This document shows positions 1 to 40,264 of a stretch of 64,000 nucleotides of DNA, one piece after another. Made by a program: the position numbers and the translations under genes. Numbering within the stretch: position 1 is the stretch's first letter; the number at the start of each line of letters is the position of its first letter. The notes beneath the pieces are model-generated. The model made no database searches. It worked only from the letters and a program-made list of their open reading frames with translations, and was not told the DNA's origin. Location: positions 62,001 to 126,000 of the IMG/VR virus record IMGVR_UViG_3300031952_000001, one strand, 5' to 3'.

Positions 1-1
1 G

Positions 2-1462
2 TTCAACCGGCCGGACGGCAGCACGGGTTTCGCTTCGGTACTCTGCCCCCTCGGCACCAACAAGTACCTTCAGGAGTCCTTGGGACGCGGTCCGTTGTTC
101 GAGCAGCCCGTGCGTTGCGCCCACTGCGAGGAGTCGCAGCGTCAGTGGGATCTCTTCAACGCCCGGTGGGAGGCTCTCGGGATCGACAAGAAGGCTCTCT
201 CGTCGGACGGCTACCGGGACATGTGCACGCGGGATCCTGTCTTGGCGGTGACGAAGAGGGCTGCGAAAGACATCGGAGCTTGGGACAAGTATTTCTTGGC
301 GATTTTCGACCACGACAAGTTCGTGGGGGCGCGTCCCTTGGGTGAGGGCGACGATCCGGCCACGCTGCACCAGGCGTGGTTCGCTCCGAAGTCGGTGCAC
401 TCGAAGCTGCTCCGGCTGTTCGATGGCGGGGCTCAGTCTGGTGGGGCTCCGCAAGGACTTCGGTTCTTCGAGAACACTCAGGGCGGATTCCCGATCATCT
501 CCATCGTGAAGGACACGAGCAAGTGCAAGAAGAACAACCTGCGGGACACGGAGTACGATGCCGTGTTCAACAATCGGTTCTTCCAGTACCCGCCCGAGTG
601 GCTCGCGTACATCCAGAACTACGCCGCGTTGGTCGATCCGACGGAGACCCTGGTTCACCTTGTCACCTACGAGGAAGGGCTCCACTACGTCAGCCAGACG
701 AAGTCCTCGGGGAACGACTACCAGCAGGCGCAGCAGCAGATGACCGGCGGGGCAGCCCCTGGTGGGATGCCTCCGGGGATGGTCGGGGCCCCACAGGGAC
801 AGCCCCCGTATGGCGCTCCTCCGGGCAGCCCTCCGGCAGCCGGTTGGGCGGGCGCGACGGGGTACCCTCCGGTCGGGAACGCCGGCCAGATGCCCATGAT
901 GCCTCCTCCGGGAATGCCCGCTGGTCTGCCCCCCGGTGCGAACCCTCTGGGGGCTCCTCCGGGACAGCCTCCGATGGGACAGCCTCAGTACGGCCAGGCC
1001 CAGCCCCCGGCGCAGCAGATGCCCTACCAGGCCCCTCCGGGCCAGGCTCCTGGGCCGGCTCCGTACCCGGGCATGGCTCCGGTTCAGCAGGCTCCGGCTC
1101 CGCAGTATCCGGCGCAGCAGCAGTACAACCCAGCTCCTGGGCAGATGCCCCAGGGAATGCCTCCAGGAGCGCCCCCAGCGGCTCAGCAGCCTCCGCAGCA
1201 GTACGGGCAGCCCCAAGGTCAGATGCCCCCGGGGACGCCCCCCATGGTCGGTGGAGCCCCTCCGCAGGGGATGCCTCCGATGGCTCCGCCGCCCCAGCAG
1301 TCGTACGGTGGGGCTCCGGTGCCGAATCAGCCGCCGGCCGTTCCCCCTCCGGGCACGGTTCCGCCGATTGGGGTGGTGCCCGGCTTCGCTCCGCCGCCGC
1401 CCGACAGGGCTCCGACGCCACCCGCTGAGGGTGCTGGTGGTCCGCCGATGCGGCAATGGTAG
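2..1462 (+). CDS. 5'-truncated protein, possibly gp32-like ssDNA-binding protein, with a long Pro/Gly/Gln/Met-rich C-terminal tail
   Basis: Frame is open from the window start. A globular N-terminal part with Cys/His residues is followed by about 250 aa of low complexity. It lies directly upstream of recA. The SSB call rests mainly on context. Confidence 0.4.
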
Positions 1463-3795
1463 GAAGGGGGCCTCTCGTGGTGAAGGACAAAGAGAAGAAG
1501 GCCGCGGAATCTGTGGTCGAGCCGGCAGTGGACATTCTCCGCAAGATCCAGGCGGAGAAGGAAAGCCAGGTGTACGGGATCCAGATGCTGGAGGGCACGA
1601 AGATCGAAAACGTGCCACGGTCTTCTTCCGGCATCTTGAGCGTCGACATCGCTCTGGGGGGTGGGTATCCCTTGGGTCGTGTCGTTGAGATCTACGGATC
1701 TGAGGCCTCCGGGAAAACGACCCTCACCCTTCATGCCATCGCAGAGGTGAATCGCAAGGGTGGGACCGCGGCGATCATCGATCTGGAGAACGCCTTGGTC
1801 CCTGCGTACGGGAAGGTGCTGGGTGTCGACTGGTCGAAGACCTTGATCTCGCAACCCGATAACGCAGAGGTCGCGCTGAACCTGGTCGAGCACCTTTGCG
1901 GCCACATGAAGTCGGGCGACATGATCGTCGTGGATTCGGTGGCTGCGCTCACCCCCGAGGCTGAGATGAGCGGGGAGATGGGGGACTCGCACATGGGTCT
2001 CCAGGCGCGGCTCATGAGCCAGGCGCTGCGGAAGCTGACGCACATCGTTTCCACCTCTGGAATCATCCTGATCTTCATCAACCAGATTCGTTGTCTCCCC
2101 TTGGATTCGTTGATATTGCGCAATGGCGCTCTTTCCCGTTTGAAGGATCTTCGGATGGGTGACGTAGTACCCTACTGTTGTGAGTCCAGCACTACCGTTC
2201 AAGGTCTTCACATCGCCGGAGTTGTTCCCGGCAAGAAGTTACAGCCAAAGAATTGCCCACCTTTTAGTCTCAGTAACTTGCATTGGCAGCCTGTCGTGGA
2301 TTGTAGGGGGCAGGTTATTAACAAGCAAGGTTCCGACATTGCAGTGGGTGATTGGCTTATTCAGCCCCTCTTGAAGAAGAGCCAGCAACTTTCTGATGCT
2401 GCCGGCTATATCGACCTTTCCGATGTGATTCAGTCGGTGGGAGAGGCGTTGCCGTCTAACGCTGCCAAAGTGCAGCTTCCAAGAATTCTTGATGAAGACC
2501 TGGCATTCTTCCTTGGGTGTTGTTACTCAGACGGAAACTTATATCAGGATGTCGATAACAGCGACTATCGTATGCAATTTACAGAGAACAGTGTTGATCG
2601 TCACACTCTGATAAAAGACTCCTGTGAGAAAGTATTTCCAGGGCTGTCTTTTGTCTCTGAGAACAAGGTGGCTCTTTACGGGAAGGCTATTTTTCTATTT
2701 CTTAAAGGTCTTGGTTGCAAAGAGCACGGGTCTGAGAAAATCATTCCAGAAAGGATACTACAATCTCGGCGCAGCGTCGTTAGGGAGTTCTTGCGTGGTT
2801 CTTTGTTTGATTCTCATGGGTTCGATAGCCATGGTTTTATTTTTACGCATGAGAATCTTGAAGCGGCTTATGAGTTTTCTAAGGTTCTGTATTACTTTGG
2901 AGTTTCTGCGGATGTTCGTGATGGGTATCTCTACATCACCGGAGCCGATGCTTTGACTTTTTCTGAAATTATAGGGTTTTCTGAACAATATAAACTAAAG
3001 AAGTCTAAGTTGTTTATTGAGACCCCCAATGCTCGCGGTAAGTATGATGTCGTGCCTTTTGAACTTTCAGAGGCCATCTTCAAGTTGATAAAGACCCTGG
3101 GGGTAAAGGGTATCTCTGGTATCCCCTATTACAATTCTTTCAAGATGTGCTTATTCAAGAGGCTTAACACTTCCAGGTTAGGGTTGATCTCGTTTTTGCG
3201 GGAGATTCAAGAGAGTCCGACGCCGTACTCTGAAATCCAGAACTTTTTGGATTTACTTAGTGATAACAGATTCTACCAGATTGAGAGCTTGGAGGATACT
3301 GAGTTCGATGCTCTGGATGTAGAGACTGGTTCAGGTCTTTTTATATCGGATAGATTCTTGACGCATAATAGCAAGATTGGTGTAGTGTTCGGCAACCCAG
3401 AGGTAACTACCGGAGGGAACGCGCTCAAGTTCTACGCCTCTCAGCGCATCGAAGTGCGTGGCGGCACCAAGCTCAAAGGCGTCGGGGAGGGCTCTCCTCC
3501 GGTGGGCCAGATCACACACATCAAGGTGGTGAAGAACAAGGTCTCTATGCCGTTCAGGAACACCGATGTGGATTTGTACTACGGCTGGGGTTTCCTCCCG
3601 GCAGCGGACATCTTCGTGACCGGGAAGCGCTACGGTGTCATCGAGGCATCCGGATCCTGGTACTCGTTCAACGGTGAGCGCCTGGGGAACGGAGAGGTCG
3701 CTGCGAAGACATTCCTCGGTCAGAACAAGGAGATGCAGGAAGCCATCAAGAAAGCGGTCCTGGAGAAGGAAAATGCACCCGCAACCGCAGGTTGA
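1456..3795 (+). CDS. recA: RecA recombinase interrupted by an intein
   Basis: Walker [10 protein letters not shown], Walker [63 protein letters not shown]. Confidence 0.97.
2092..3369 (+). mobile_element. Intein with LAGLIDADG homing endonuclease (426 aa) in RecA
   Basis: Starts CLPLDS and ends FLTHN with a +1 Ser. LAGLIDADG-like blocks [10 protein letters not shown] and [14 protein letters not shown] is visibly more AT-rich than the exteins. Confidence 0.93.
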
Positions 3796-4054
3796 GAATA
3801 GGTACCGCGAGGTCGTGCGGGCGGCCCTGGAATGCCTCGGAGACGAGCTTCTGCTGGAGGACGCGGACGTGTTGTGTGAGTACCTCGTGCTGCGCTTCTT
3901 GAAGACGTCCCCGAGGGTCACCTCGGGGTCCTCTCTGGAGGACTCGCTCGTGGAGCTTCAGGAGTTCGTCCGGAAGCTCTACCCGGTGCTCCTCACGTTC
4001 GTGTCCATGGTCAACACGTCCGCGATGCCGCGGTCGGAAAGTGCCAGAGCATGA
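3773..4054 (+). CDS. hypothetical protein
   Basis: ATG overlaps the recA end and the stop overlaps the next ATG. Confidence 0.6.
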
Positions 4055-5178
4055 AGACCATCCGGTTCATAGCGTACGGAGACATCCACCACGACCGGAA
4101 GGCCGCCCGGTGCCTCACGATGCAGGATACTCTGGGGATCGAGCAGCAGGTGCACCAGCGTGTCGCCGAGGGCAAGTTCGACTTCTCGGTGTTCGTCGGG
4201 GACCGCTACCTGAAGCGTGAGCCTGAAGATGAGATCAAGGTTACCGCGGATCGTGCGCTCGCGTACTTCCTCTCGCAGCGTCCGAACGCTCCGCACTACC
4301 ACCTCGTGGGGAACCACGACTGGACGCGGAACAACCGGTCGTGGCACACGTCGGAGTCCTTGAGGTCGGTCCCGAACCTCTTCGTTCTGGACAAGCCTGG
4401 AACGCCGTTGTTTCCCGGGCGTGAGAACGATGACTACATCATTCATGCGCTCCCTGCGGATGCTCCGTTCGACGAGAAGATCTACCAGCCTACTCACGGG
4501 AAGCCCTTCTTCAACTTGTTCCTGTTCCACGGCATCGTGAAGGGCTCGTTGATGTCGGACACCTCGTCTCGGGTGTTCGACAACGGGATCGACATCGCGC
4601 AGCTCGACCGGGACTGGTGGGACTTCGTGATCGGAGGGGACATCCACGTTCCTCAAAAGATCCCATTCACGAACACCTCAGGGGGCTACACAGGCTCCGT
4701 CTTGCAGAGGACGCGCGCAGACGCTGACAAGCCCCGCGGGTGGATCGAGGTGACGGCCGTCTGGGACGATACGAAGTGGACGGTCACTACGGAGTTCCGA
4801 GCGACACGGAACTTCTTCCACCGGGAGATCTGGCAGGTCGGTCCAGAGACCCAGTACCCGGAGATCAAGATCAACGAGACCTACATCACCGACCAGGCTG
4901 TCGAGGTGAAGCTCGTAGGGAACCGGAAGGATGTCGACCGCGTGGCGGACGATCCTCGCTGGAAGAACTACAAGGACATCATGCTCGCGAGGAGCGTCGA
5001 CATCATCCGCGAGTACAAGGTCGAGAACGAGACCGCCATCGTGGACTTCAGTACCTCCCGCGGGGTGCTCGACGACCTGACGCTCTACATGCAGAGTGGG
5101 TTCGCAAACGTTGGAGGGCTGTCGCCTGACAGGATCAGCGCGATGGTGACGAAATTGAGGGAGGTTCAGAATGGTTGA
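4051..5178 (+). CDS. SbcD/Mre11 (T4 gp47-like) metallophosphoesterase nuclease
   Basis: GDIHH, FVGD, VGNHD, FHG, GDIHVPQ and YTGS motifs; close to an SbcC-like gene. Confidence 0.88.
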   Translation: MKTIRFIAYGDIHHDRKAARCLTMQDTLGIEQQVHQRVAEGKFDFSVFVGDRYLKREPEDEIKVTADRALAYFLSQRPNAPHYHLVGNHDWTRNNRSWHTSESLRSVPNLFVLDKPGTPLFPGRENDDYIIHALPADAPFDEKIYQPTHGKPFFNLFLFHGIVKGSLMSDTSSRVFDNGIDIAQLDRDWWDFVIGGDIHVPQKIPFTNTSGGYTGSVLQRTRADADKPRGWIEVTAVWDDTKWTVTTEFRATRNFFHREIWQVGPETQYPEIKINETYITDQAVEVKLVGNRKDVDRVADDPRWKNYKDIMLARSVDIIREYKVENETAIVDFSTSRGVLDDLTLYMQSGFANVGGLSPDRISAMVTKLREVQNG

Positions 5179-5476
5179 GCCCATGAAGAAGTGGAAGATC
5201 GTTTCGGACGGAACGAGCCACGGAACCAAGATCATCAGCCCCTCGGGTGAGATGGTGGGCCTGGTTCAGAAGCTCTCCATCTTCATCGAGTGCGGGGAGC
5301 CTTTCGTGAAGGCGGACATGTCGGTCATCCTTCCGCAGCTCGACGTGGAGGTTCTGGAATCCTCGTTCTCGAACAACCTGGCGGACTGCAAGAACTGTGA
5401 TCCCGTCTGTGACAACGGAGCTGAGGCCTTGAAGCGCTTCGCGGAGTGCCATGCCGAAGGCAAGAAGGAGGGCTGA
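5171..5476 (+). CDS. hypothetical protein
   Basis: Operon-coupled ORF. Confidence 0.65.
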   Translation: MVEPMKKWKIVSDGTSHGTKIISPSGEMVGLVQKLSIFIECGEPFVKADMSVILPQLDVEVLESSFSNNLADCKNCDPVCDNGAEALKRFAECHAEGKKEG

Positions 5477-5477
5477 G

Positions 5478-6119
5478 ATGGTAGACGTCATCAAGCCGTG
5501 GGCGCGCATCGAGGACGAGTTCGACGGGAACGAGATGCTGAAACGCATCGAGCGCGCGGGGCGCACCTGCTACAAGAGCGAAGACCGAATCACCGAGGAG
5601 AGTGCTCCGGCGTTCGTGAAGAAGATCAAAGCCATGGGGCACGAGTCCGTGCTCGAACACGAGAAGGTCACCGTTCGCATCGTCTGCGACCGCGGTGTCA
5701 CTCACGAGATCGTGCGTCATCGCCTCTGCGCTTTCAGCCAAGAGTCGACGCGGTACTGCGACTACCACAAGGCCGGTGAGATCCAGGTCATCGTTCCATG
5801 TTTCTGGAGAGATCCGAGCGACCCGGCGAAGAAGATCCCGAAAGCACAGGTCTGGTACGATTCCATGCTCGCGGCCGAGAAGGCGTACAACAAGCTACGT
5901 GAGTTAGGAGCATCTCCACAAGAAGCTCGCTCGGTGCTTCCTAACAGCCTCAAGACGGAGATTGTGGTGACGGCCGACCTGCGTGAGTGGCACCACATCT
6001 TCACGCTCCGCACGTCGAAGAAGGCGCACCCGCAGATGCGGGAGATCATGATCCCCCTGCTTGCAGAGTTCAAGAGTCGTATTCCCGTCGTCTTCGACGA
6101 CATCGTGGTGGAGGACTGA
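5478..6119 (+). CDS. thyX: FAD-dependent thymidylate synthase
   Basis: GHESVLEH, HEIVRHRLCAFSQESTRY (RHRx7S), EARSVLPNS, LREWHHIFTLR, AHPQMR. Confidence 0.96.
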   Translation: MVDVIKPWARIEDEFDGNEMLKRIERAGRTCYKSEDRITEESAPAFVKKIKAMGHESVLEHEKVTVRIVCDRGVTHEIVRHRLCAFSQESTRYCDYHKAGEIQVIVPCFWRDPSDPAKKIPKAQVWYDSMLAAEKAYNKLRELGASPQEARSVLPNSLKTEIVVTADLREWHHIFTLRTSKKAHPQMREIMIPLLAEFKSRIPVVFDDIVVED

Positions 6120-6120
6120 C

Positions 6121-6306
6121 ATGGCGAAGATCGTCGAGTACGTGTGCCCGAACGAGGCCTGCTGTGGATCCACGGTTGAAGAGATCTTCAACGACACGGA
6201 GAAGCAGCCCCAGGTTCACCCCGAGGCGGAGTGCGAGCACTGCAAAGGGCCGATGACGCGCGGGGACAATATCAAGAGCAACTGCCAGGTGTGGAAGAAC
6301 GTCTGA
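6121..6306 (+). CDS. small zinc-ribbon protein (FmdB-like)
   Basis: EYVCPNEAC ... ECEHCKG. Confidence 0.55.
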   Translation: MAKIVEYVCPNEACCGSTVEEIFNDTEKQPQVHPEAECEHCKGPMTRGDNIKSNCQVWKNV

Positions 6307-8366
6307 TGCTCGTCATCAAGTCAGCGAACCCTACTGGGTTGTTTTCGTACGGCCGGTCTCCGGACATCGACGTGCAGCGTCGTGGTCTCGTCAACCTCAT
6401 CGGGGTGAACGAGGACAAGGGTGGCGACTCGAACGGCGCGGGGAAGACCTCCCTCTTCAACGCTCTCTGCGAGGTGCTCTTCGGAGACAATCCAACTGGC
6501 GTAAATGGCAACGAAGTCGTGAACCAGGTCCTCAACGAGGGCTACGCCGGCAGGGTCATTTTCTCTTCTTGGGAAGGTGTCGACTACCGGGTGACCTACT
6601 GCCGCGGGTGGAAGGAAGACTACTACCCGGTCGACAACAACACGAAGACCTCCTACAAAGGCACCGCGCTGTTCTTCGACAAGCTCGAAGGCGCTCAATG
6701 GGTCGACTGCCGCGGCGCAACGATGGCGGAGACCCGTACACTTGTTCAGGTTGCTGTGGGAGTCACCTACAGCCGGTTCCTCTCCATCTCGTATCTGAGC
6801 CACCGGGTCGGTTCGACCTTCTTGAGGGGGACGAACAAGGACCGGATGGACATCATGGCCGGCATCACGGGCGTCGAGGATTGGGACGAGATCCTGGTCT
6901 CCGCTCGGGCGAAGAAGCTCGCCGTCGGCCAGGACATCTCGTCGGTGCAGCAGCGCATCGCCTACGACGAGGGTGCTCTGGAGCAGATGCGGAGCGCTCT
7001 CTCGCAGCTGAAGAACGCCGACTGGGGGCAGGTCCTCATCAAGTGCGATCTGGACACTGCATCGGCGCAGGACCAGCTCAAGCTCGCGGAGGACCACCGG
7101 CTGAAGCTCCAGAACGAGTGGGCAGCCCGGAAGATCACCCAGACGGAGGCGTACAACCGTTCGGGCTCGGGAGTCCTTTCCCAGGAGATCTCGGATCTGT
7201 CCGTCCAGCTGAGCGACCTCAAGAACCCCATGTTCGCGGATCCCTCGCTGCCGGAGTTCGACTTGTCGTTCGCTCAGCGGGTGGAGAACAAGCGCGGCGA
7301 GCGCGACATGGCTCTCGGGGAGCTGCGCGCCCTCGTCTCCGGCAAGGACCTCCGCAGCGTGGACAAGTGCCCGACCTGCGGGGCGACCATCTCGGCCAAG
7401 GCCAAGGCCTCTATCACGGAGAAGATCACTGTACTAGAGTCCAGGGCCTCCACCCTCGAAGTGGAGCTGAAGGCGCTCACGAAGGCCAAGAATGAAGAGG
7501 AGGAGCGCATCCGACAGGCTCGGGCTCTGCGTCATCGGGAGCGGTTGCAGCAGGCCATCTCGGTAGAGGCCCAGATCGCGGAGAAGAAGGCTCTCCTGCG
7601 GCAGAGCGCGCTGGAGTACGAGCGCATCACCGGGGAGATGCAGGCCCTGGAGGTCGAGGGTCGGAAGGCCCATGAGCTGTGCACGCAGTACACTCAGAGG
7701 ATCACTCAGATCGCGGCCTACAAGGATGACGTCGAGAAGCGCCTCGGGGAGATCCAGCGTGTGGAGCACAACGTCGCAGAGCGGGAGGAGGCCATCGTGA
7801 AGTCGAAGGCCTCCATCTCCGAGGCTCTGGAAGACGTCAAGGTGCTGGAGTGGATCATCTCCAACATCCCCTACATCAAGCTGCACCGCATGTCCGTGGC
7901 GATGACTCAGCTGTCGGAGAAGGTGAACCACTACCTGTCCGAGATGGGCGACACGATCCGGGTGAACATCACCTCCTTCGAGGAGAAGAAGGCGAAGAAG
8001 GGTGCCGGCGACATCAAGGACGCGCTCAAGTCCGAGGTCAAGGTCGAGGTGGTCGACGGGGAGAAGAACATCGATCCGAGGCTCTACTCGGATGGGGAGA
8101 CCTCGAAGATCTCCAACGCGGTGATCCGCTCTCTGCACGACATCGCCGTCCAGGCGGGGCACGGGTGCAACCTCGTGCTCCTCGACGAGATCTTCTCGTT
8201 CGTGGACGCGAACAACTCGCAGAAGCTCGCGGACAGCTTCAACGACGTGAGCACCGGGACCACGTTCATCACGGACAACTCGGGTCACGTTGAGGACTTG
8301 ATGGATTTCGATGAGGTCTGGATCGCCAGGAAGACTGGCGGCGTCACAACAATCGAGGTGCGATAA
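6306..8366 (+). CDS. SbcC/Rad50 (T4 gp46-like) SMC-family ATPase
   Basis: Walker A SNGAGKTS, coiled coils with a central CPTC zinc hook, signature variant YSDGE, Walker B LVLLDE. Confidence 0.9.
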   Translation: MLVIKSANPTGLFSYGRSPDIDVQRRGLVNLIGVNEDKGGDSNGAGKTSLFNALCEVLFGDNPTGVNGNEVVNQVLNEGYAGRVIFSSWEGVDYRVTYCRGWKEDYYPVDNNTKTSYKGTALFFDKLEGAQWVDCRGATMAETRTLVQVAVGVTYSRFLSISYLSHRVGSTFLRGTNKDRMDIMAGITGVEDWDEILVSARAKKLAVGQDISSVQQRIAYDEGALEQMRSALSQLKNADWGQVLIKCDLDTASAQDQLKLAEDHRLKLQNEWAARKITQTEAYNRSGSGVLSQEISDLSVQLSDLKNPMFADPSLPEFDLSFAQRVENKRGERDMALGELRALVSGKDLRSVDKCPTCGATISAKAKASITEKITVLESRASTLEVELKALTKAKNEEEERIRQARALRHRERLQQAISVEAQIAEKKALLRQSALEYERITGEMQALEVEGRKAHELCTQYTQRITQIAAYKDDVEKRLGEIQRVEHNVAEREEAIVKSKASISEALEDVKVLEWIISNIPYIKLHRMSVAMTQLSEKVNHYLSEMGDTIRVNITSFEEKKAKKGAGDIKDALKSEVKVEVVDGEKNIDPRLYSDGETSKISNAVIRSLHDIAVQAGHGCNLVLLDEIFSFVDANNSQKLADSFNDVSTGTTFITDNSGHVEDLMDFDEVWIARKTGGVTTIEVR

Positions 8367-8854
8367 TGTCCGATCAGGAAAACGACCAGCAGATCCCTCC
8401 TCCCGCGCCCACACTGTTCGAGGTGTTCCAGCAGCTCATGGGTGAGATCCCGCTCCCGAGCCCCCTCAGGGGCATGGAGCAGACAGTGATGATCATCGGG
8501 ACCTGCGGCGGGGGTCGTGGTGTCATCGGGAGTGTGCACGACTTCCCGGAGTTCCTGAATGACGTCTGGGTTCACTACCCACTCGCCTTCGGTGAGGTCA
8601 TCCAGAGAGACCCACGAGGTCAGCCTCTGGGGGTAGCCTTCTCTGCCGGCAGGATCTTCAACACACTCTCGTTGCCGAGGATGTCTCGGTTCAATTTCGA
8701 CTACCTCACCATCTTGAAGGCCGATTCCAACAAGGACAAGGAGGCCCGTCAGATCTACGAAGACGCCATGAAGGCGTACACGGTGGACGACGCTGGTCTC
8801 ATCATGGCTCCGCCGGGAGCGCTGTCGAACCTGAAGGACCTCGGCAGGCCATGA
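8366..8854 (+). CDS. hypothetical protein
   Basis: Operon-coupled ORF. Confidence 0.7.
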   Translation: MSDQENDQQIPPPAPTLFEVFQQLMGEIPLPSPLRGMEQTVMIIGTCGGGRGVIGSVHDFPEFLNDVWVHYPLAFGEVIQRDPRGQPLGVAFSAGRIFNTLSLPRMSRFNFDYLTILKADSNKDKEARQIYEDAMKAYTVDDAGLIMAPPGALSNLKDLGRP

Positions 8855-9099
8855 GCGGTCCGGCGAGCATGGCCCGCCGGGACAAGGCGGAGAAGAAGGC
8901 GAAGCGCGTCAGGGCGAACTCGATCAAGTACCAGGTCGACAACGGCGACATCGTCTTCCTGGAGGGGCCCTACGGTGGTAAGTACGCTTCGCAGGTCTTC
9001 CAGATGGGGGTCAAAGAACGGGACTACGTGATCAACAACTTGTGGTTCACGAACGATGAGAAGGTGATGGATATTCTTCGAAAATGGATGTGTCGGTAA
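8851..9099 (+). CDS. hypothetical protein
   Basis: ATGA overlap with the previous gene. Confidence 0.65.
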   Translation: MSGPASMARRDKAEKKAKRVRANSIKYQVDNGDIVFLEGPYGGKYASQVFQMGVKERDYVINNLWFTNDEKVMDILRKWMCR

Positions 9100-9599
9100 C
9101 AGAGCCTCGTCCCATCCGGATTCCCATCGAGGAGTACCGGTTCAAGATCCCCGGCAAGCCGTGGGTGCAGAAGAACAACCTTATCATCCGGTACAAGAAC
9201 CCCCGTGCGAAGTCGGGTCCGTTCATCGGCCACTCTGCCGAGATGTCTCACGCCAGGGAGCGCCTGGCGAACGAGATGTACTCGCAGTTCCAGCGCCAAG
9301 GTGGTAAGAGACCTCTCGACTTTCATGTGGAGGTCGACTTTGTTTTCTACGTGGCAAGGGGCCACGAGCCCGATCTGGACAACCTGCCGGCCATCGTCTG
9401 TGACGCAATGCAGGGCATCCAGGTGAAGGGCGCAGCAGGGGTCAAGGTCGCATCGGTCTTGCAGAACGACATCAGCATTCGCAAAGGAACGATCCTGAAG
9501 ATCGTGGAAGGAGACATTGACTATGTCGGAGAACCTCGAACAGAAATCATCGTCCGAAGATACCTCGGTGCCTGCTGCGGAATCGCTTCTCCCAGCTGA
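9084..9599 (+). CDS. RusA-like Holliday junction resolvase
   Basis: IPGKP, PDLDN..VCDAM and QND motifs. The usual Lys after DLDN is Ala here. Confidence 0.72.
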   Translation: MDVSVTEPRPIRIPIEEYRFKIPGKPWVQKNNLIIRYKNPRAKSGPFIGHSAEMSHARERLANEMYSQFQRQGGKRPLDFHVEVDFVFYVARGHEPDLDNLPAIVCDAMQGIQVKGAAGVKVASVLQNDISIRKGTILKIVEGDIDYVGEPRTEIIVRRYLGACCGIASPS

Positions 9600-10863
9600 G
9601 GAGGCCGCGCTCGCCCCTCCCGAGGAGTCCATCATCCCCGCCGACGCGGTGAGGATCGAGACTCCGGAGGCGGACGCGATGGTCGAGGAGAAGCTCCATG
9701 AGCCCATCATTGAACCGATGGCACCGCCCTACAGGGTGGTGTTGTGGTTCAAGTACGACGAGCTTCGGGAGGCCTTCGATCAGTTCTGGAAGGAGAACTC
9801 GAAGGCCATCATCGCGAACCTCGGTCTGAAGGGGAAGAAGGGCGCGGGGGGATCCATGCCCGGTGCCCAGGGTATGGCGGAGAAGCGGCTCCCCTTGAAG
9901 GCCTTGTACCAGCAGGTGCTCGTGGGCAAGATCCGGGAAAAGGTGCCGAACATCTTCTTCCTGGAGGGGTTCGAGCTGTTCAACTTCGAAAAGGGGCAGC
10001 GCCCGCACATGGTCTCCATCGTCTACTTCTACCCGAAGCTCACGCTGAAGCAGGAGATCAACTGGGCCTGCAAGAAGCCGAAGGAGCCCTCGCGGCAGGT
10101 GCAGTTCGAGGCCCGGCTCCGGGAGTTGCAGATGCAGTTCCGGAAGCTCGAAGACGATCCGGAGGGCGCGATCACGGAGCTGAGCAACATCCAGCTGGAC
10201 GTGATCGCGAGCATCGACGGGAAGCCCTACATCAACGGGACCCTCCAGCGTGCGTGGGTGGACATCTCTAGCATCCCGAAGGATCTGTCGGCGCAGTTGA
10301 TCGGCCACAAGGTCGGTGATCTCTTCGAGTGCGACTACCTGGCGAGCCCCCGCGACACGGAGAATGCCGGGAAGACCGTGCACGCGGCGATCAAGATTCA
10401 CAACCTCCAGAAGATCATCATTCCTCCGGTGGATGACGATCTGGCGAAGGACGCGGAGTTCGATGATCTGAAGGCCTTCGAGGCGCGCTTCCATCAGGAT
10501 TTCGATGGCTATGTTCGGAACATGCACAAGTCGGTGGTCGCCGATCATGTGATCGGCCACATCGTGCAGAATTCCGTGATCCCGCCGGTTCCCCAGGGCT
10601 GGCTCGACTCCGCGATCAAGGGGATGTCCGACTACCACCTTCGGAACTTCGGTGGGAACAAGAAGGCCGCGATGAAGGCCATCGGCGCTCAAACCGAAGC
10701 GGACTTCGTGCACCGTTTCACTGGTCAGGCGTACCGTGAGATGATGCAGGATCTGGCGACTCGGAAGTACGGGGAGCTGTTCAACGTGGCCCCCGGCTCC
10801 GATGAAATGTTCGAGAGCATGCTCGACAATGTTCGGTGGGTCAACGAGGAGGAAAAACCATGA
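9523..10863 (+). CDS. tig: trigger factor homologue (FKBP-type domain plus C-terminal domain)
   Basis: LDVIASIDGKPY..AQLIGHKVGD..AGKTVHAAIKIHNL..PPVDDDLAKDAEFDDLKAF follows the trigger factor pattern. The GFRxGxxP ribosome-binding loop is not recognisable. Confidence 0.75.
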   Translation: MSENLEQKSSSEDTSVPAAESLLPAEEAALAPPEESIIPADAVRIETPEADAMVEEKLHEPIIEPMAPPYRVVLWFKYDELREAFDQFWKENSKAIIANLGLKGKKGAGGSMPGAQGMAEKRLPLKALYQQVLVGKIREKVPNIFFLEGFELFNFEKGQRPHMVSIVYFYPKLTLKQEINWACKKPKEPSRQVQFEARLRELQMQFRKLEDDPEGAITELSNIQLDVIASIDGKPYINGTLQRAWVDISSIPKDLSAQLIGHKVGDLFECDYLASPRDTENAGKTVHAAIKIHNLQKIIIPPVDDDLAKDAEFDDLKAFEARFHQDFDGYVRNMHKSVVADHVIGHIVQNSVIPPVPQGWLDSAIKGMSDYHLRNFGGNKKAAMKAIGAQTEADFVHRFTGQAYREMMQDLATRKYGELFNVAPGSDEMFESMLDNVRWVNEEEKP

Positions 10864-11297
10864 CGCAGAAGCGTAGCTGGAGGGACTGGGCGATCAACTT
10901 TGTGCGGGAGACCAATGCGTGTGTCGGTGAGGTGCCGGCCACGGGCCTCCCTACGGACATGATGACCGAGGACGAGTTCAAGATGACGGTCAGTCACTCC
11001 CACAGCGCAGAGCACTGTCCGCACTTCCTGAACGAGAGGCTGGCGATCCCCGTGTCGCCCGACCTGCGGGAGATCCGCGGGATCGATGCTTCACCGATCA
11101 CGGAGGACGACGTCGCTCGCGGGAAGAAGACCTTCGTGAAGAGCGGGGAGCCCCTCAGCGCGGTGGATCGCCTCAAGCGGGCGCTTCACACCTACGTGGA
11201 CCTCATCGAGATCAAGGAGGGTGGGCGTCTCAGCGTGCCCCAGCAGCTGATGAAGTTCGAGGTGTTCCTCCACGAGTTTTTCGACGTTAAGGGGTAG
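10860..11297 (+). CDS. hypothetical protein
   Basis: Operon-coupled ORF. Confidence 0.65.
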   Translation: MTQKRSWRDWAINFVRETNACVGEVPATGLPTDMMTEDEFKMTVSHSHSAEHCPHFLNERLAIPVSPDLREIRGIDASPITEDDVARGKKTFVKSGEPLSAVDRLKRALHTYVDLIEIKEGGRLSVPQQLMKFEVFLHEFFDVKG

Positions 11298-11307
11298 CTG
11301 ATCGGCC

Positions 11308-12270
11308 ATGAACAAGTGCGATACCCCGTACTGCCCCCGGCTGATACCTTCGGCACGCCTGAAGCGCGCGACGAAGGAGGGGTACCACTTTTGTGATCGG
11401 TGCCGGGGTGAGCACTCGTACAGGGTTCTCGTTGCGCAGACGCAACACGGCATGCCGATCAAGGAGCTGCTCCTGGAGGCCAGCTCCTTCCAGTCGGCCG
11501 GCAGCATGGCGGACTACGTCGGGGTGAGCTTCGTCACGGTCTACCACTGGATCCTGCGCTACTACGACATGTCCTTCCAGGAGTTCCGCAGGAGGTACAT
11601 CTGCAAGAAGTCGTCTCGCGGTCAGTGCTACCACCTCGACCTCGGGCGGTCGACGTACAGCCGGAACGACTACGTGGTGAAGAAGATCAAGGCCAAGAGG
11701 TTCTGCGCGTGCCTCAACGCCCTGGAGCGGAACCTGATCATGACGAACGCTCCGCTGCACGTCATGCAGTCGGTGCTCCGGGGGAAGCCCAGGATCGAGA
11801 AGATCTCGGACGATGTCTTTGCCCTCGTGCCTGATCCGATCATGTTCATCTTGGAGCGCCCGGTGTACCTCGATCTGCACCAAGGCGTTCCAGCCAAGAA
11901 GTCCAAGAAGTCCAAGAAGCGCGATCACGTACAGAAAAAGAGACTCCCTCGGGTACCCGGAACCCTGAAATTCCGTGAAAAAGTCCTCACAGCCCTGCAT
12001 GCGCTTGGGGGCTCCGCAACCGTCGATACGATACGCTTCAGCATCCTGACTTGCGAGGGTGAACACCCCCGGGCGAACAACACGAGACGCCTGCTGTACC
12101 AGCACGCCGCGCTCTTCAAGCTCTCTTCGGACGACAGCAAAGTGATCGAGCTGACGGACTTCGGGATACAGGTGGCGGAGGCGCTGATCAAGGCCTCTGA
12201 GGTGGGCGGCGGTCCCGCGGTTGTTAAGGAGGACACGAAATTTAAAAAATCGAAAGGACCTGTCGTATAG
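11308..12270 (+). CDS. putative DNA-binding regulator (Zn-finger, HTH and a wHTH-like C-terminus)
   Basis: CDTPYC..CDRC; MADYVGVSFVTVYHWI looks like an HTH; C-terminal KVLTALHALGGSATVDTI. Confidence 0.45.
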   Translation: MNKCDTPYCPRLIPSARLKRATKEGYHFCDRCRGEHSYRVLVAQTQHGMPIKELLLEASSFQSAGSMADYVGVSFVTVYHWILRYYDMSFQEFRRRYICKKSSRGQCYHLDLGRSTYSRNDYVVKKIKAKRFCACLNALERNLIMTNAPLHVMQSVLRGKPRIEKISDDVFALVPDPIMFILERPVYLDLHQGVPAKKSKKSKKRDHVQKKRLPRVPGTLKFREKVLTALHALGGSATVDTIRFSILTCEGEHPRANNTRRLLYQHAALFKLSSDDSKVIELTDFGIQVAEALIKASEVGGGPAVVKEDTKFKKSKGPVV

Positions 12271-12280
12271 TAGACTCGTC

Positions 12281-12607
12281 ATGGGACCAGTTACGGAAAA
12301 ATTTCTACTGGACTTCATGGGGCACGCGAAGGCGCTGAGCCTCTACAGAGGCAAGCGTGCTTCGAACCCAGCGGAAAATCCGTACTGGATGAACCTCCTG
12401 GAGGGTGCGGCAAAGGCGTTGACTGTTGTTGCCATCGGGACCTTGGACTGGAAGCTCGGAGCGATTTCGAAGTTGCTTGAGTCCTGGCTCGATGATAAAC
12501 GTAGGGAGTATGCGGAAACGCAGAGAAAAACTGAGTACGGTTACAACGTGAACCTGATTCAGAACGTCCCTTCGAGTGACAGCAGCTGGAGCCACACGTA
12601 CTACTAG
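12281..12607 (+). CDS. hypothetical protein
   Basis: ORF filling the gap; relatively AT-rich. Confidence 0.55.
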   Translation: MGPVTEKFLLDFMGHAKALSLYRGKRASNPAENPYWMNLLEGAAKALTVVAIGTLDWKLGAISKLLESWLDDKRREYAETQRKTEYGYNVNLIQNVPSSDSSWSHTYY

Positions 12608-12618
12608 GGTACGGAGAG

Positions 12619-13470
12619 ATGACGATGAGAACGGAACGACGCATCGCTGATCACCACGAAGATCCTCGGGTCGCTCACCACCTGTGGGCCGCTGATGAGG
12701 ACGAGGGTGGCGTTCACGTCCGTCGCAACAGACAGGAGCCTGAGATGTTCCCTGGAGAGCCGAAGACCGCGAAGACCGCGGCGACGTTGTCGCAGAAGAT
12801 TGCGGCCGAGAAGTGCGTGGCCTGCCTGGGGCTGTTCGGTGCGGATCTGGTCGACGATCCGACCCTGAACAGTGACCTCCCTGTCGGGGTCGTGGGTCGC
12901 TTCAACGCGGCAGTTCGCGATGAAGGGGCTCCGAAGGTCCGTGACTGGGACGAGCTGCGCAGGGCGTTCGGGCCCGAGAAGATCGCGCACGCCCGGAAGG
13001 CCATCGGTCGCGGGATGCAGACCCGTCTGACTTCGAAGGCGTGGAACCTCCCGTTCCTGATGACGTCGGACATCCTGGACCAGTTCCCGAGCGTCCCTCT
13101 GGAGCGGGTGGCCCAGGCGGTCGAGTTCATCCGGTCGACTCCTCCCGATAGGCGGGTAGGGTCCACGATGGACTTCATCGCGCGTCGGGTGGCGAAGATC
13201 TTCGAGGAGTACAGCGATCCGAGTTCGCGCCGGCTCGCGGTCGACGAGAAGGCTTCGGCCTACTGGCAGTCCTACTACGGCCCATTCGGCAAGGAGCTGG
13301 TCCGTGAGGTGCAGAAGCGCGTCCGCGCCGACCTCGCCGGCATCTGGCTCCGGAAGAACGGGGTCGATGAGGTGGCGGCCGAATACTGGAGGAAGTATTT
13401 CGGTGAGTACGGAGACAAGTGGGTCACCGTGGTCCCGAAGAAGCTGTCCCCCTCGAACGCCAAGCGGTAG
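12619..13470 (+). CDS. hypothetical protein with two VDExAxxYWxxY[FY]Gx[FY]G modules
   Basis: Internal repeat shared with ORF 14556..18617. Confidence 0.7.
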   Translation: MTMRTERRIADHHEDPRVAHHLWAADEDEGGVHVRRNRQEPEMFPGEPKTAKTAATLSQKIAAEKCVACLGLFGADLVDDPTLNSDLPVGVVGRFNAAVRDEGAPKVRDWDELRRAFGPEKIAHARKAIGRGMQTRLTSKAWNLPFLMTSDILDQFPSVPLERVAQAVEFIRSTPPDRRVGSTMDFIARRVAKIFEEYSDPSSRRLAVDEKASAYWQSYYGPFGKELVREVQKRVRADLAGIWLRKNGVDEVAAEYWRKYFGEYGDKWVTVVPKKLSPSNAKR

Positions 13471-13472
13471 AA

Positions 13473-13817
13473 ATGCCGCTCGAAACCCCCGAAAATTTCC
13501 AGGAAATTCTGAAAGACTTCGTAGAGAAGCACGGTACCGGCAAGGCCAAGGGCCTCTCCGAGCTGCTGGCCCTCATGAAGAAGGCCAAGGCGAAGAAGCC
13601 TCCCGCAGCTCCTGAAGAGAAGAAGCCCGAGAACGACTGTCCTGAGGACGTTGAGGACTGTTCGGACGTCGTTAGTCCCTGTTGTAACGTTCCGGTATCG
13701 ACTGTCTTTGGAACTTTGCCTTTGAAGGTCAGTTGCAGGCAGTGCGGGAAGGAATACCTGCTGGGGGTGCTCATGAGGGGCCTTCTGAGGAAGTCGAAAA
13801 CGCCTGCCGTACTTTAG
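13473..13817 (+). CDS. hypothetical zinc-finger protein
   Basis: SPCCNVP ... CRQCGK. Confidence 0.6.
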   Translation: MPLETPENFQEILKDFVEKHGTGKAKGLSELLALMKKAKAKKPPAAPEEKKPENDCPEDVEDCSDVVSPCCNVPVSTVFGTLPLKVSCRQCGKEYLLGVLMRGLLRKSKTPAVL

Positions 13818-13874
13818 AACTTGGCAAAGACCTTGTGCTAGAGTTGCCTGCGAAGCTGAGATTCTTTGTAGACA

Positions 13875-14516
13875 ATGGAGAGGAAAATGAACCCATTCGG
13901 ACGCAACGTGTGCCAGGACCTCGCGGACCTCGCTGGACAGGACGTGCACGGCATCAACATGAGCCGACTTGCGGCTCGGTACTCCCAAGCCGCTGCCGAG
14001 CGCCACGCCCGGGATGAGGCCAACCAGGAAGAGTTCAACCTGAACCTTCCGATGGTGGAGATGGTCCAGAAGAGGATCGCGGAGCAGCTCGCTGCCGAGG
14101 CGGACGAGGTCAACGGCCACCTCCCCATCGCGTCCGTCTTCGATGCCTACCAGATCGTGAAGGCGCGGAAGGACGTGGACAAGGATCCGGGTCTGCGAGC
14201 GCTGTACGGGCACCTGGAGGCGATGTGGAAGAAGAACCGCTCGGCCTCCATCTCCGCGAACAGTTACCTCCGCCTCCACGATCACTACAAGAGCCGCTAC
14301 CCCAGGTCTGCCGCGGTGGAGGTGATCGAGGAGATCGGTCACAAGGGGTACGCCACGCTGCCGCTGTCCGATCTCACTCGCATCGCGTCGACCATCGAGA
14401 GCCAGGCGGACTTCGACAAGGCGATGATCTACTACGGGCTGGGTGGGCCGGCTCCGCATCAGGTGAAGGCGCGTCGGTACATCCTCGCGCTGCTGAACGG
14501 CGAGGACGCGGAGTAG
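13875..14516 (+). CDS. hypothetical protein
   Basis: Long ORF with genome-typical codon usage. Confidence 0.75.
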   Translation: MERKMNPFGRNVCQDLADLAGQDVHGINMSRLAARYSQAAAERHARDEANQEEFNLNLPMVEMVQKRIAEQLAAEADEVNGHLPIASVFDAYQIVKARKDVDKDPGLRALYGHLEAMWKKNRSASISANSYLRLHDHYKSRYPRSAAVEVIEEIGHKGYATLPLSDLTRIASTIESQADFDKAMIYYGLGGPAPHQVKARRYILALLNGEDAE

Positions 14517-14555
14517 TTCTTGGATTTCACGTCGTAGACGAAAAGGATAAGGAAC

Positions 14556-23100: not shown

Positions 23101-23203
23101 GCTCGTGGAAGACCTGAAGAAGGACGGGTACAACGTCAACGACGACGAATACTACCCGATGACAGCAGAGGAGCTTCAAGCTCTCGACCCCATGAACAGG
23201 TAG
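20174..23203 (+). CDS. 1009-aa multi-module acidic protein (putative virion cargo polyprotein)
   Basis: Junctions RREAA, RRRAAA, KKLAQ and RSAQ (twice). Confidence 0.75.
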   Translation: MSKFNQLMEKEHVRNHPMFRGFDDRLKAARERLSRKSAAPDLRDVFSSQKAVGLGTNDRSVRAYIQEAALSARSVLDMCEFPMLPQISFNNVKSVKMAAHDDSQVVDAEILFNVRICTKSGAIRQALIPVVVSRGVVVPPSTLIYDQQMKVIAQSTIDEIVQRNTSYQLPPMRRMYDPPLRGEELDRAASERNTLGWMPREVVTDGMGIRHSRREAAFESYAMSLTGQDQTNPGTPSSLAGQPPAGVTQSDATQLSNPATDPTMAGVPGGEKTPYGQYAESGSATDSLYRQILAQPTIMQQVQDILTPSRETLIDNISQMISPMMSVLGLRTEDVEWDFLLDDLKAGLGGTTASKIGKAEVRKVALMIAEYATGRRRFGRRRAAADTATALAEMTTYLQSAQDTFKPDELAYYQQIAQEAQSALQGGDEQTARDLLVELENAFSFTDVPQEQEVPTDYWQTFTANCKKLAQQTNLVKELEVDEDDNRPMKRYMPAGYDLVLEDMVKAEEGGLDTFPRPYSHIERNYILRRYPTCSRDKWLPHLINDGFALNPYGKGPNRGRPVREGSKKAGQAPNIIANLGDVNYIDYGGLLIVDNGGGPQGWLIEVDDSDSGGGWQWEKTAKWMLYRFDIEKFKIATDESGSYLVPDSYQPEWGPASKYEEWFADKLGDVAGSSGLPDQDLISDLTSDDPVVRGGAYREIIGYFGAHEFDSYPETYNAKEIHALFGEEYHGGEDEELEEEPEEGFGEEPEAPIEPKLSRSAQMDDEGEEESWEPNVRAKKDLRTSDGDRIKAGTGGFLMWARGDMIEVLVPPSIQDSFKREDWEDIGPVSPRSAQNEPYPGMAVSMAVGQAKQSGGSEEDALRIALESPVLKGVPRDQVAEMIRKEWSWEPKSSTPSTGGPGSLDDEFEEEDEIDPNLNPVIYLDNMDHEDGMVTVHIADPRAGEFAENDQSIQGSNWESDGPDFAYAIIMDSPTLVEDLKKDGYNVNDDEYYPMTAEELQALDPMNR

Positions 23204-31701: not shown

Positions 31702-31989
31702 ATGTCAGTTGAAGCGTTGGGGAAGAAGAAGATCGAAGAGATCATCCAGCTGCGAAGCAAGGGCAAGACGATCTCGGAGACGGCGTGGACGCTCGGGATC
31801 GCCCCGTGGCATGTCGCGTACATCTCCAGGTTCCTGAAGCTGTGCGTGACGGCCGAGGAGTTCCAGTGGATCGAGGAGGAGGCCGAGGCCAACAACTTCG
31901 GCACGGTGGGCGAGTTCGTCATGGACGTGTTCAACCGGACCTACGAGGAGTTCTACAAGAAGGCTCCGCGCAAGAAGAAGTCCGCCTGA
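31702..31989 (+). CDS. small HTH protein
   Basis: LRSKGKTISETAWTLGI. Confidence 0.55.
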   Translation: MSVEALGKKKIEEIIQLRSKGKTISETAWTLGIAPWHVAYISRFLKLCVTAEEFQWIEEEAEANNFGTVGEFVMDVFNRTYEEFYKKAPRKKKSA

Positions 31990-40192: not shown

Positions 40193-40264
40193 TGCGGGGT
40201 GGTCAAGTGGCAAGACACCAGGTTCATACCCTGGAGACCGTGGGTTCGAATCCCATCCCCGCTA
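40193..40264 (+). tRNA. tRNA-Met (CAT), 1:72 mismatch
   Basis: Anticodon arm CCAGG-TTCATAC-CCTGG; T arm GTGGG-TTCGAAT-CCCAT; CCA not encoded. Confidence 0.9.

What the first reader, a model, noticed from the sequence alone, without database searches (positions are those of the whole stretch)
9523..10863. Phage-encoded trigger factor lacking the ribosome-binding signature
Seen: FKBP and C-terminal domain motifs of trigger factor, but LGLKGKKGAGGSMPG where GFRxGxxP is expected. Known: that loop docks TF on uL23. Inference: a ribosome-independent chaperone for phage proteins, or one retargeted to modified ribosomes. It sits at the end of the repair operon.
Basis: partly seen in the sequence, partly recalled or inferred. 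Interest (0 to 1): 0.62.

Follow-up and report, generated by a model that had tools for sequence, protein, structure and literature searches.

The report
Phage trigger factor with remodelled docking loop
A roughly 212-kb uncultured sediment phage carries its own diverged copy of the bacterial chaperone trigger factor, in which the motif that normally docks it on the ribosome is replaced by a different lysine/glycine-rich loop that is the best-conserved part of the protein, so the docking site looks re-specified rather than lost.

Summary
Window 9523-10863 (+) encodes a 446-aa protein with all three trigger-factor (TF) domains. TIGR00115 matches at E=8e-24 but scores 84 bits against a 180-bit cutoff, and Pfam finds nothing. 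Full-length TFs are the top PDB fold hits. Where GFRxGxxP should sit, between helices a1 and a2, the protein has LKGKKGAGGSMP, and no alignment register restores the signature. The genome is a phage (IMG/VR record, portal gene). What is new here: the gene is not a recent host pick-up. It belongs to a clade of about 60 sequence clusters (at 50% identity), none with the signature. In every locus examined (contigs 57-212 kb, GC 35-60%) it sits in the block RecA-SbcD-SbcC-(RusA)-TF. The replacement loop [YIVL]-K-G-[KR]-K-x-K-G-G is the most conserved segment of the family, while PPIase pocket residues are lost. I therefore read it as a phage-owned TF-type holdase whose docking tip was re-specified. 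Ribosome independence is not shown, and a basic loop could still bind the exit site. No phage-encoded exit-site ribosomal proteins were found, and the gene is not at the end of its operon. Verdict: new variant of a known kind, of moderate to high interest.

The parts
9523..10863 (+). Phage trigger-factor-like gene (446 aa plus stop), P0001
   Evidence: ORF; TIGR00115 E=8e-24; full-length TF fold matches
9508..9513 (+). Shine-Dalgarno AAGGAG, 9 nt before the ATG at 9523
   Evidence: sequence read; supports the ATG at 9523 over the TTG at 9517 and the database's GTG at 9568
9523..9696 (+). Acidic disordered N-terminal extension (residues 1-58, net charge -12, pI 4.05) with the conserved motifs MSENxE..SSEDTS and ESIIPxDAV; canonical TF has no such extension
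   Evidence: (pLDDT <50)
9697..10047 (+). N-domain (residues 59-175) with the fold of the TF ribosome-binding domain
   Evidence: domain-only model pLDDT 93.8; top PDB hits are TF ribosome-binding domains 1oms, 2aar, 1p9y, 3gty, 2mlx
9820..9864 (+). Remodelled signature loop LGLKGKKGAGGSMPG (residues 100-114); family consensus [YIVL]-K-G-[KR]-K-x-K-G-G; replaces GFRxGxxP
   Evidence: alignments; conservation
10159..10422 (+). FKBP-fold domain (residues 213-300) with a degenerate PPIase pocket (E. coli E178/F198/Y221/F233 correspond to I237/L255/P276/A288)
   Evidence: VIA Z 10-11.7 to SlyD, FKBPs and TF PPIase domains; residue mapping; no Pfam FKBP_C hit
10423..10860 (+). C-terminal TF substrate-binding domain (residues 301-446), about 40 aa shorter at the C-terminus than typical TF
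9084..9599 (+). RusA-like Holliday-junction resolvase; its 3' end overlaps the TF gene by 77 nt, and it directly precedes the TF gene in six of the eight group-A loci compared
10836..11297 (+). Downstream 153-aa ORF of unknown function that overlaps the TF gene's 3' end by 28 nt; conserved in the high-GC relatives
1456..8366 (+). Upstream conserved block: RecA/UvsX (1456-3795), SbcD (4051-5178), ThyX (5451-6119), SbcC (6231-8366)
   Evidence: synteny

Best explanation
The gene encodes a phage-owned, ATP-independent chaperone of the trigger-factor type. It is an ancient core gene of a clade of large uncultured phages, co-transcribed with the recombination and replication genes (RecA, SbcCD, RusA).

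Shown: it keeps TF's three-domain build, namely the N-terminal docking domain, the FKBP 'head' and the C-terminal substrate-binding body.

Shown: the uL23-docking signature GFRxGxxP is replaced by a longer Lys/Gly-rich loop ([YIVL]-K-G-[KR]-K-x-K-G-G). That loop is under the strongest purifying selection in the protein, while the PPIase pocket has lost most of its key residues.

Inferred: the protein works as a holdase or foldase for newly made phage proteins. This genome has many very large proteins and intein-bearing proteins. The basic loop and its two flanking helices are still a docking surface, most likely for the acidic ribosomal exit site (23S rRNA domain III, uL23, uL29) in an altered, host-general binding mode. 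PPIase catalysis is weak or absent. The acidic N-terminal tail, with its conserved short motifs, may modulate or add to that docking.
For: Homology and architecture.

Phage origin: IMG/VR virus record, 212 kb, CheckV completeness 100%; portal protein phrog_16240 at E=6e-63; UvsX, SbcCD and RusA PHROG hits.

Core-gene status: the same gene order appears in L001-L003, L039, L040, L042 and L045, at GC 35-60%, on contigs of 57-205 kb. The deeper group B (P0087) also follows ThyX-SbcD-SbcC.

Family size and coherence: 63 representative clusters at E<=1e-30, none with the signature. In the ML tree, group A is one branch with SH-aLRT 100, and groups A, B and the intermediates split from the canonical TFs at 100, apart from one long-branch canonical row (P0141) that falls on the non-canonical side.

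The loop is the functional hot spot: six of 13 invariant columns in subgroup A4 are Y-K-G-K-(K)-x-(K)-G-G; K103, K106, K108, G109 and G110 are 76-90% conserved across 59 representatives; the loop segment has the highest information content, and window 85-129 ranks first, p=0.005.

PPIase decay: the position matching Y221 is a gap in 36 of 59 sequences, F233 becomes A, S or V, and F198 becomes L, I or V. The key residues are taken from PMC9527764.

Precedent that a variant signature does not by itself mean loss of ribosome association: algal TIG1. The FRK residues are the ones needed for ribosome binding in E. coli (PMC11725819), and a hydrophobic-plus-basic pair persists here.
Against: There is no direct evidence of ribosome binding. 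F44 has no aromatic counterpart in most members, and G47 and P50 are lost. The isolated N-domain matches TF ribosome-binding domains only modestly (Z about 5, rmsd about 4 A), so the surface is substantially changed. About 8-10 of the 59 group-A members have a shorter basic loop without the GG pair (P0012, P0018, P0021, P0029, P0030, P0044, P0059, P0069). The tight, ancient linkage to DNA recombination genes is not what a general translation chaperone predicts. The host is unknown. Chaperone activity itself is inferred from homology.
Confidence: 0.5

Rival explanations
1. It is a ribosome-independent, dedicated chaperone or assembly factor. The N-domain and its K/G loop have been re-used to bind a conserved phage partner or nucleic acid, for example DNA or the neighbouring recombination machinery (RecA/UvsX, SbcCD, RusA), rather than the ribosome. 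This is.
For: The canonical signature is absent in every family member. The gene is locked into the RecA-SbcD-SbcC-RusA block across phages of 35-60% GC, and even in the deeper group B. A Lys/Gly-rich loop is a generic binder of polyanions. From general knowledge, TF-like proteins dedicated to a single client exist (PceT/RdhT). Also from general knowledge, TF can act off the ribosome in assembly (the T. maritima TF-S7 complex, PDB 3gty, which is among the fold hits).
Against: Known ribosome-independent TF-like chaperones have dropped the N-domain altogether, whereas here it is retained and is the most conserved region. A partner conserved over such a broad phage clade and range of host GC would have to be a core phage protein, and none has been identified. 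Gene-order conservation in phage replication modules often reflects shared timing of expression rather than physical interaction.
Confidence: 0.3
2. It is a host-takeover factor. The protein occupies the ribosomal exit site, or dimerises with host TF through its N-domain, to displace or neutralise host TF or SRP, biasing protein biogenesis towards phage needs rather than acting mainly as a chaperone.
For: The TF N-domain is both the ribosome-docking element and the dimerisation element in E. coli (PMC5722895 abstract). The altered loop could give a different affinity or binding mode. The phage also carries other translation-related genes (a tmRNA and two tRNAs).
Against: The complete substrate-binding C-domain and the FKBP head are conserved over the whole family, which an inhibitor would not need. 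No evidence of competition was obtained.
Confidence: 0.12
3. It is a recently captured, decaying host tig gene (an auxiliary gene or assembly contaminant) with no specific function.
For: Some database 'phage' records carry ordinary tig genes that look like contamination, such as UNVERIFIED_ORG records.
Against: The ORF is intact. Identity to any bacterial TF is 22-30% over long alignments. Synteny is conserved in at least eight viral contigs. The family forms a separate clade with a long stem branch, SH-aLRT 100. Its novel loop is strongly conserved.
Confidence: 0.02

Closest known systems
Bacterial trigger factor (Tig; TIGR00115 / COG0544; E. coli TF, PDB 1w26, 2vrh)
   Same: Same three-domain order and folds: an N-terminal ribosome-binding-domain fold, an FKBP head and a C-terminal body with arms. 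The alignment is collinear over model residues 59-442 against TF residues 1-421. The E120 and Y129 positions in helix a2 are shared with many TFs.
   Different: No GFRxGxxP signature; instead a Lys/Gly loop with a 5-residue insertion. PPIase key residues are mostly replaced. There is an acidic N-terminal extension of about 58 aa and a C-terminus about 40 aa shorter. The protein scores 84 bits against the 180-bit equivalog cutoff and has no Pfam hits. It sits in a phage recombination module, not next to clpP-clpX.
Phage-context canonical TFs (P0116-type; phrog_26774, labelled 'unknown function')
   Same: Encoded in phage-like replication contexts. P0116 lies next to a phrog_405 DNA polymerase. 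They share N-domain features such as 'TPY' and a conserved Trp.
   Different: They keep GFRKGKIP and hit all three Pfam TF domains. In the ML tree they group with bacterial TFs, not with the K/G-loop clade.
Group B phage TF-like proteins ('TKGG[FY]R' loop; P0078, P0087, P0099 and others)
   Same: They occupy the same position after ThyX-SbcD-SbcC in a viral-type contig, are non-canonical at the signature, and are sister to group A in the tree.
   Different: The loop solution differs: G-[FY]-R is kept, with no xGxxP and no KGKKxKGG.
Chloroplast TIG1 of green algae (PDB 7zgi)
   Same: The signature is degenerate and the PPIase key residues are substituted, with activity about 100-fold lower; ribosome association is reported as preserved in the chloroplast ortholog (PMC9527764). 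7zgi is among the top fold hits.
   Different: It is organellar rather than viral. TIG1 keeps the first Gly and the last Pro of the motif, and its uL23 co-varies. Here the partner is unknown and no phage uL23 exists.
TF-like dedicated chaperones PceT/RdhT of organohalide respirers (from general knowledge, not tested here)
   Same: TF-derived and not dependent on the canonical ribosome signature.
   Different: Those proteins lack the N-terminal domain entirely. Here the N-domain is present and is the most conserved part.

Membership tests
Trigger factor (Tig, TIGR00115 equivalog) | Three-domain architecture N(RBD)-FKBP-C with TF-specific folds | tested here: met
   Foldseek top eight hits are full-length TFs, E 3e-16 to 5e-11; VIA Z=14.8 over model 59..442 against 1w26 1..421; N-domain alone hits TF ribosome-binding domains first
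Trigger factor (Tig, TIGR00115 equivalog) | Score at or above the curated equivalog cutoff (180.2 bits), or Pfam Trigger_N, FKBP_C and Trigger_C hits | tested here: not met
   84.2 bits, covering profile positions 72-368 only; zero Pfam hits at E<=10; some homologs carry only PF05698
Trigger factor (Tig, TIGR00115 equivalog) | GFRxGxxP ribosome-binding signature between helices a1 and a2 | tested here: not met
   LKGKKGAGGSMP at the homologous position; the pattern is absent from all group-A members
Trigger factor (Tig, TIGR00115 equivalog) | FKBP PPIase key residues (E. coli E178, I195, F198, Y221, F233; PMC9527764) | tested here: not met
   I237, I251, L255, P276, A288 in P0001; the Y221 column is a gap in 36 of 59 sequences and F233 becomes A, S or V across the family
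Trigger factor (Tig, TIGR00115 equivalog) | Binding to uL23/uL29/23S rRNA at the ribosomal exit | not testable with these tools
   The one complex prediction (N-domain against E. coli uL23) returned no verdict; this needs co-sedimentation, cross-linking or cryo-EM
Trigger factor (Tig, TIGR00115 equivalog) | Typical bacterial context (tig next to clpP-clpX; PMC7804408 abstract) | tested here: not met
   The gene lies between RusA and an unknown ORF in a phage RecA-SbcCD block
K/G-loop phage TF-like clade (group A, defined here) | Loop [YIVL]-K-G-[KR]-K-x-K-G-G, position after SbcC and (usually) RusA on large viral contigs, and a single branch in the tree | tested here: met
N-domain-less TF-like chaperones (PceT/RdhT type) | [quoted passage not shown] | tested here: not met
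   The N-domain is present and confidently folded

The most novel reading that the evidence does not exclude
The Lys/Gly loop, perhaps together with the conserved acidic N-terminal peptide, defines a new docking mode for a trigger-factor chaperone. One possibility is a different footprint on the ribosome that lets a phage-private chaperone coexist with or outcompete host TF and SRP across many hosts. Another is a switch of the TF docking domain from the ribosome to DNA or the recombination machinery, which would make this the first TF-derived chaperone built into a viral DNA-repair and replication module.
Probability: 0.25. Interest if true: 0.8.

Novelty: new variant of a known kind. Interest (0 to 1): 0.58.

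Why it matters
Trigger factor is the textbook ribosome-docked chaperone, and its GFRxGxxP loop is treated as defining. This work finds a sizeable, previously undescribed viral clade that keeps the whole TF machine but has swapped the docking loop for a different one that is just as constrained. That gives a natural experiment on what the TF N-domain tip really needs in order to work. It adds a co-translational-type chaperone to the list of phage-encoded proteostasis factors, alongside GroES- and GroEL-like proteins. It also raises a concrete, testable question: do large phages bring their own ribosome-associated chaperone, or have they redeployed TF to another target? My literature searches found no description of it. 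Databases label relatives either 'trigger factor' by automatic COG transfer or 'unknown function' (phrog_26774).

Tried and rejected
- Pfam scan of the protein: no hit even at E<=10, so family assignment had to come from NCBIfam, PDB profiles and folds.
- tblastn of the protein against 50,697 phage records: no match even at E<=10. No cultured phage has this variant. SbcC finds only about 25%-identical relatives, so the clade has no close cultured member.
- Terminase_6N and Phage_capsid Pfam models in the whole genome: no hits. Phage identity rests on the IMG/VR and CheckV record, the portal and the replication genes.
- Complex prediction of the N-domain (59-175) with E. coli uL23: score 0.01, no verdict. 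This is neither support nor evidence against binding.
- Promoter and terminator scan of 3800-14600: counts equal to shuffled sequence, so it is uninformative.
- Scan of 185,579 prokaryote species genomes with family patterns: only canonical TFs, 22-30% identical over long alignments. This gave no prophage copy and no host clue. The patterns were specific to the close subfamily, so absence holds only for that subfamily.
- Sequencing-run search: 16 holders, 15 of them labelled sediment or freshwater-sediment metagenomes, and none on record as RNA. Expression could not be assessed, and read laying was not used.
- BLAST of the N-terminal tail and of the whole protein against the phage's own ORFs: no paralog and no shared tail.
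- The first broad alignment (A3) was too divergent for locus search, so I split it into A4 and A5.
- 'Phage' records with ordinary tig, such as the UNVERIFIED_ORG Staphylococcus phage record, were judged likely contamination and not used.
- The idea that the first 127 nt recurring at genome position 210,615 marks a terminal overlap was rejected, because the repeat is internal, 1.37 kb from the end.
- The costly exhaustive protein search was used once, because the novelty claim depended on how far the family extends.
Full report
**1. What is at the coordinates**

Window 9517/9523..10863 (+) is an intact ORF. I take the ATG at 9523 as the start. An AAGGAG Shine-Dalgarno sequence lies 9 nt upstream. 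The N-terminus from this ATG (MSENxE..SSEDTS) is conserved in homologs that are only 41-50% identical. Database gene calls (P0002, P0003) start at an internal GTG and lose that motif. The product, P0001, is 446 aa long.

**2. It is a trigger factor homolog**

- **Sequence searches:** Pfam finds nothing, even at E<=10. NCBIfam TIGR00115 (tig) matches at E=8e-24, but at 84 bits against a 180-bit cutoff, and only over profile positions 72-368, downstream of the signature region. phmmer finds E. coli TF (1w26) at E=1e-4. A 10-sequence family profile raises this to about 1e-15 for V. cholerae and E. coli TF.
- **Full-length fold:** An AlphaFold2 model built from the family alignment is confident (pLDDT 82.8), apart from residues 1-58 and the loop at about 101-112. 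Its top eight Foldseek PDB hits are full-length TFs, E=3e-16 to 5e-11. VIA-align maps model 59..442 collinearly onto E. coli TF 1..421 (Z=14.8) and maps the FKBP head at Z=10-11.7.
- **N-domain alone:** The N-domain, folded with 56 family sequences, is very confident (pLDDT 93.8). Its best matches are all TF ribosome-binding domains. These are the top nine Foldseek hits, including ribosome-bound 2aar, and the top three of 48,161 chains by VIA. The scores are modest, however: Z 5.1-5.4, with 101-103 of 120 residues aligned at rmsd about 4 A. The fold is therefore the same, but clearly remodelled.
- **Independent check:** ESM Atlas features also point to TF clusters, at 0.94.

**3. The signature loop**

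The segment L100-G114 (LGLKGKKGAGGSMPG) lies between helices 78-100 and 113-122, the same topological place as GFRxGxxP.

- MAFFT aligns canonical PGFRKGK-----VP with LKG-KKGAGGSMPGA, which deletes the Phe and inserts 5 residues.
- HMMER aligns Mycoplasma TF IKGFRKGKVPP with the family's ikgkkgkGGkl, which turns Phe into Lys.
- A third register would pair G101-L102-K103 with G43-F44-R45.

No register preserves G47 and P50 together. In every register a basic residue sits at the R45 position, and a hydrophobic residue ([VYIL]102, in 51 of 59 sequences) lies next to it.

**4. It is a phage gene**

- The genome is a single IMG/VR virus record of 211,982 bp with 59.8% GC and CheckV completeness of 100%.
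- A 1,429-aa ORF matches a phage portal (phrog_16240, E=6e-63), with intein-like inserts.
- The window carries UvsX-like RecA, SbcD, ThyX, SbcC and RusA, a topoisomerase, a serine recombinase and a transposase, a tmRNA and two tRNAs.
- Six of the seven largest ORFs have no PHROG match, and the nearest cultured relatives of SbcC are only about 25% identical. This is a very novel lineage.
- The DNA is found in sediment metagenomes.

**5. The wider family (new in this work)**

The word search found 11 relatives, on contigs of up to 205 kb. The exhaustive profile search found 4,766 TF-superfamily hits, with a distinct top tier of 63 representatives at E<=1e-30. I sorted all full-length hits by the loop:

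- **Group A:** about 59 full-length representatives, none with the canonical motif. Most carry [YIVL]-K-G-[KR]-K-x-K-G-G. About 8-10 have a shorter basic loop.
- **Group B:** a TKGG[FY]R loop.
- **Intermediates:** for example P0082, with GFKKGKGGTP.
- **Canonical TFs:** these include some in phage-like contexts. P0116 carries GFRKGKIP, has all three Pfam domains, lies next to a phrog_405 DNA polymerase and matches phrog_26774 at 3e-50.

A maximum-likelihood tree (IQ-TREE quick search, SH-aLRT support, midpoint root for drawing only) puts group A on one branch (100). It separates groups A, B and the intermediates from the canonical TFs (100), apart from one long-branch canonical row (P0141) that falls on the non-canonical side. 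The phage-context canonical TFs sit beside the bacterial ones. An NJ tree agrees.

**6. Conserved context**

In eight viral contigs carrying group-A genes (57-212 kb, GC 35-60%) the order is RecA-SbcD-SbcC-...-(RusA)-TF-d320-d283-d132-d213-d1353. The TF start overlaps the RusA end in five of the six loci where RusA directly precedes it. A group-B gene also follows ThyX-SbcD-SbcC. The gene is thus an old core gene of a large-phage clade, not a recent auxiliary gene. It is also not at the end of its operon, because a 153-aa ORF overlaps its 3' end and the block continues. No member of the close subfamily occurs in 185,579 prokaryote species genomes.

**7. Where selection acts**

- Across 59 group-A representatives, the loop has the highest mean information content of any segment (2.47 bits).
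- The 45-residue window 85-129, which covers the loop and its flanking helices, ranks first of all sliding windows (Mann-Whitney p=0.005 against the rest).
- 12 of the 30 most conserved columns fall in that window.
- In subgroup A4, six of the 13 invariant columns are loop residues.
- The locus-search tool independently chose the loop as its search pattern for both subgroups.
- By contrast, the PPIase key residues named for E. coli TF (E178, I195, F198, Y221, F233; PMC9527764) correspond to I237, I251, L255, P276 and A288. Across the family, the Y221 column is mostly a gap and F233 is A, S or V.

**8. Interpretation**

These facts argue against a decayed docking site and for a re-specified one. 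What it docks to is not shown.

For the ribosome:
- The whole ribosome-binding-domain fold is kept.
- A hydrophobic-plus-basic pair and strong positive charge are retained (net +4 to +10 over the region).
- The TF contact surface includes 23S rRNA.
- The FRK residues are the ones needed for binding in E. coli.
- Algal TIG1 shows that a variant motif does not by itself mean loss of ribosome association.
- A ribosomal target would explain conservation across hosts of very different GC content.

Against the ribosome:
- There is no aromatic equivalent of F44 in most members.
- The N-domain geometry is changed.
- The linkage to recombination genes is striking.

The one complex prediction gave no verdict and is not used as evidence.

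**9. Unexplained extras**

The acidic, disordered N-terminal extension (58 aa, net charge -12) has short motifs conserved across group A. The M-[ST]-E-N-x-E-x-[KN]-S-x-S-E-D start is kept even where the gene does not overlap its upstream neighbour. It has no counterpart in canonical TF. It may modulate the basic loop or bind a partner.

**10. Verdict**

- **Observation:** confirmed.
partly supported. Phage TF and missing signature: yes. Ribosome independence: not shown, and in my view less likely than re-specified docking.
- **Novelty:** a new variant of a known kind. This is a coherent viral TF clade with a replaced, highly constrained docking loop and a degenerate PPIase site. It was undescribed in the literature I could search.
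- **Confidence:** about 0.9 that this is a functional phage TF-type protein, and about 0.5 for the full mechanism as stated.

Noticed in passing
window 39345-39713 (+): Phage-encoded tmRNA (ARAGORN tag peptide ADADVIPFPKMAVPSLQREAA; Rfam RF00023, 82.3 bits, full length), followed by tRNA-Met(CAT) at 40193-40265 and tRNA-Pro(TGG) at 41030-41108. Together with the TF-like gene, this suggests the phage intervenes in translation and protein quality control.
   Followed up: partly
window 1456-3795 (+): The RecA/UvsX ORF is 779 aa. The RecA core (residues 39-212) and RecA_C (719-771) are split by an insert of about 500 aa, probably an intein. Relatives in L001, L003, L040, L042 and L045 are 331-344 aa and lack it.
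   Followed up: partly
genome 198745-203034 (L010): The portal gene (phrog_16240, E=6e-63, matched in three stretches) is 1,429 aa. It also gives extra hits to ribonucleotide reductase, endonuclease, helicase and polymerase PHROGs, which is typical of intein or homing-endonuclease inserts.
   Followed up: no
window 31785-32708 and 34409-35593 (+): A serine recombinase/invertase (phrog_95/125) and an IS-type transposase (phrog_506, E=2e-87) sit inside the phage genome, next to a dip in GC content (window 32-36 kb).
   Followed up: no
window 14556-18617, 20174-23203; genome L004-L009: Very large ORFs (823-1,588 aa) have no PHROG or Pfam match. The 1,353-aa ORF is conserved in shorter form (785-798 aa) downstream of the TF block in L040 and L045.
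   Followed up: no
window 9523-9567; database proteins P0002, P0003: Public gene calls for this protein and its 80%-identical relative start at an internal GTG (9568). This cuts off the conserved MSENxE..SSEDTS N-terminal motif.
   Followed up: yes
L036 6001-7287 (P0087) and relatives P0078, P0083, P0099 and others: A second non-canonical phage TF-like group with a 'TKGG[FY]R' loop, also placed directly after ThyX-SbcD-SbcC, on a contig with 37% GC that also carries DnaE.
   Followed up: partly
L046 3418-4716 (P0116): A TF with the canonical signature and all three Pfam domains sits in a phage-like context, with a nucleotide-kinase-like gene upstream and a phrog_405 DNA polymerase downstream. 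phrog_26774, labelled 'unknown function', is in fact a trigger-factor family.
   Followed up: partly
genome 1-127 and 210615-210741: An exact 127-nt direct repeat links the start of the genome record and a site 1.37 kb from its end. It is not a simple terminal overlap.
   Followed up: partly
phage-collection records OR844993.1, CAKLQH020000005.1 and MT83xxxx 'Bacteriophage sp.': Several deposited 'phage' records carry ordinary tig-like genes. At least one is flagged UNVERIFIED_ORG and is unannotated, so these are likely bacterial contamination rather than true phage TFs.
   Followed up: partly
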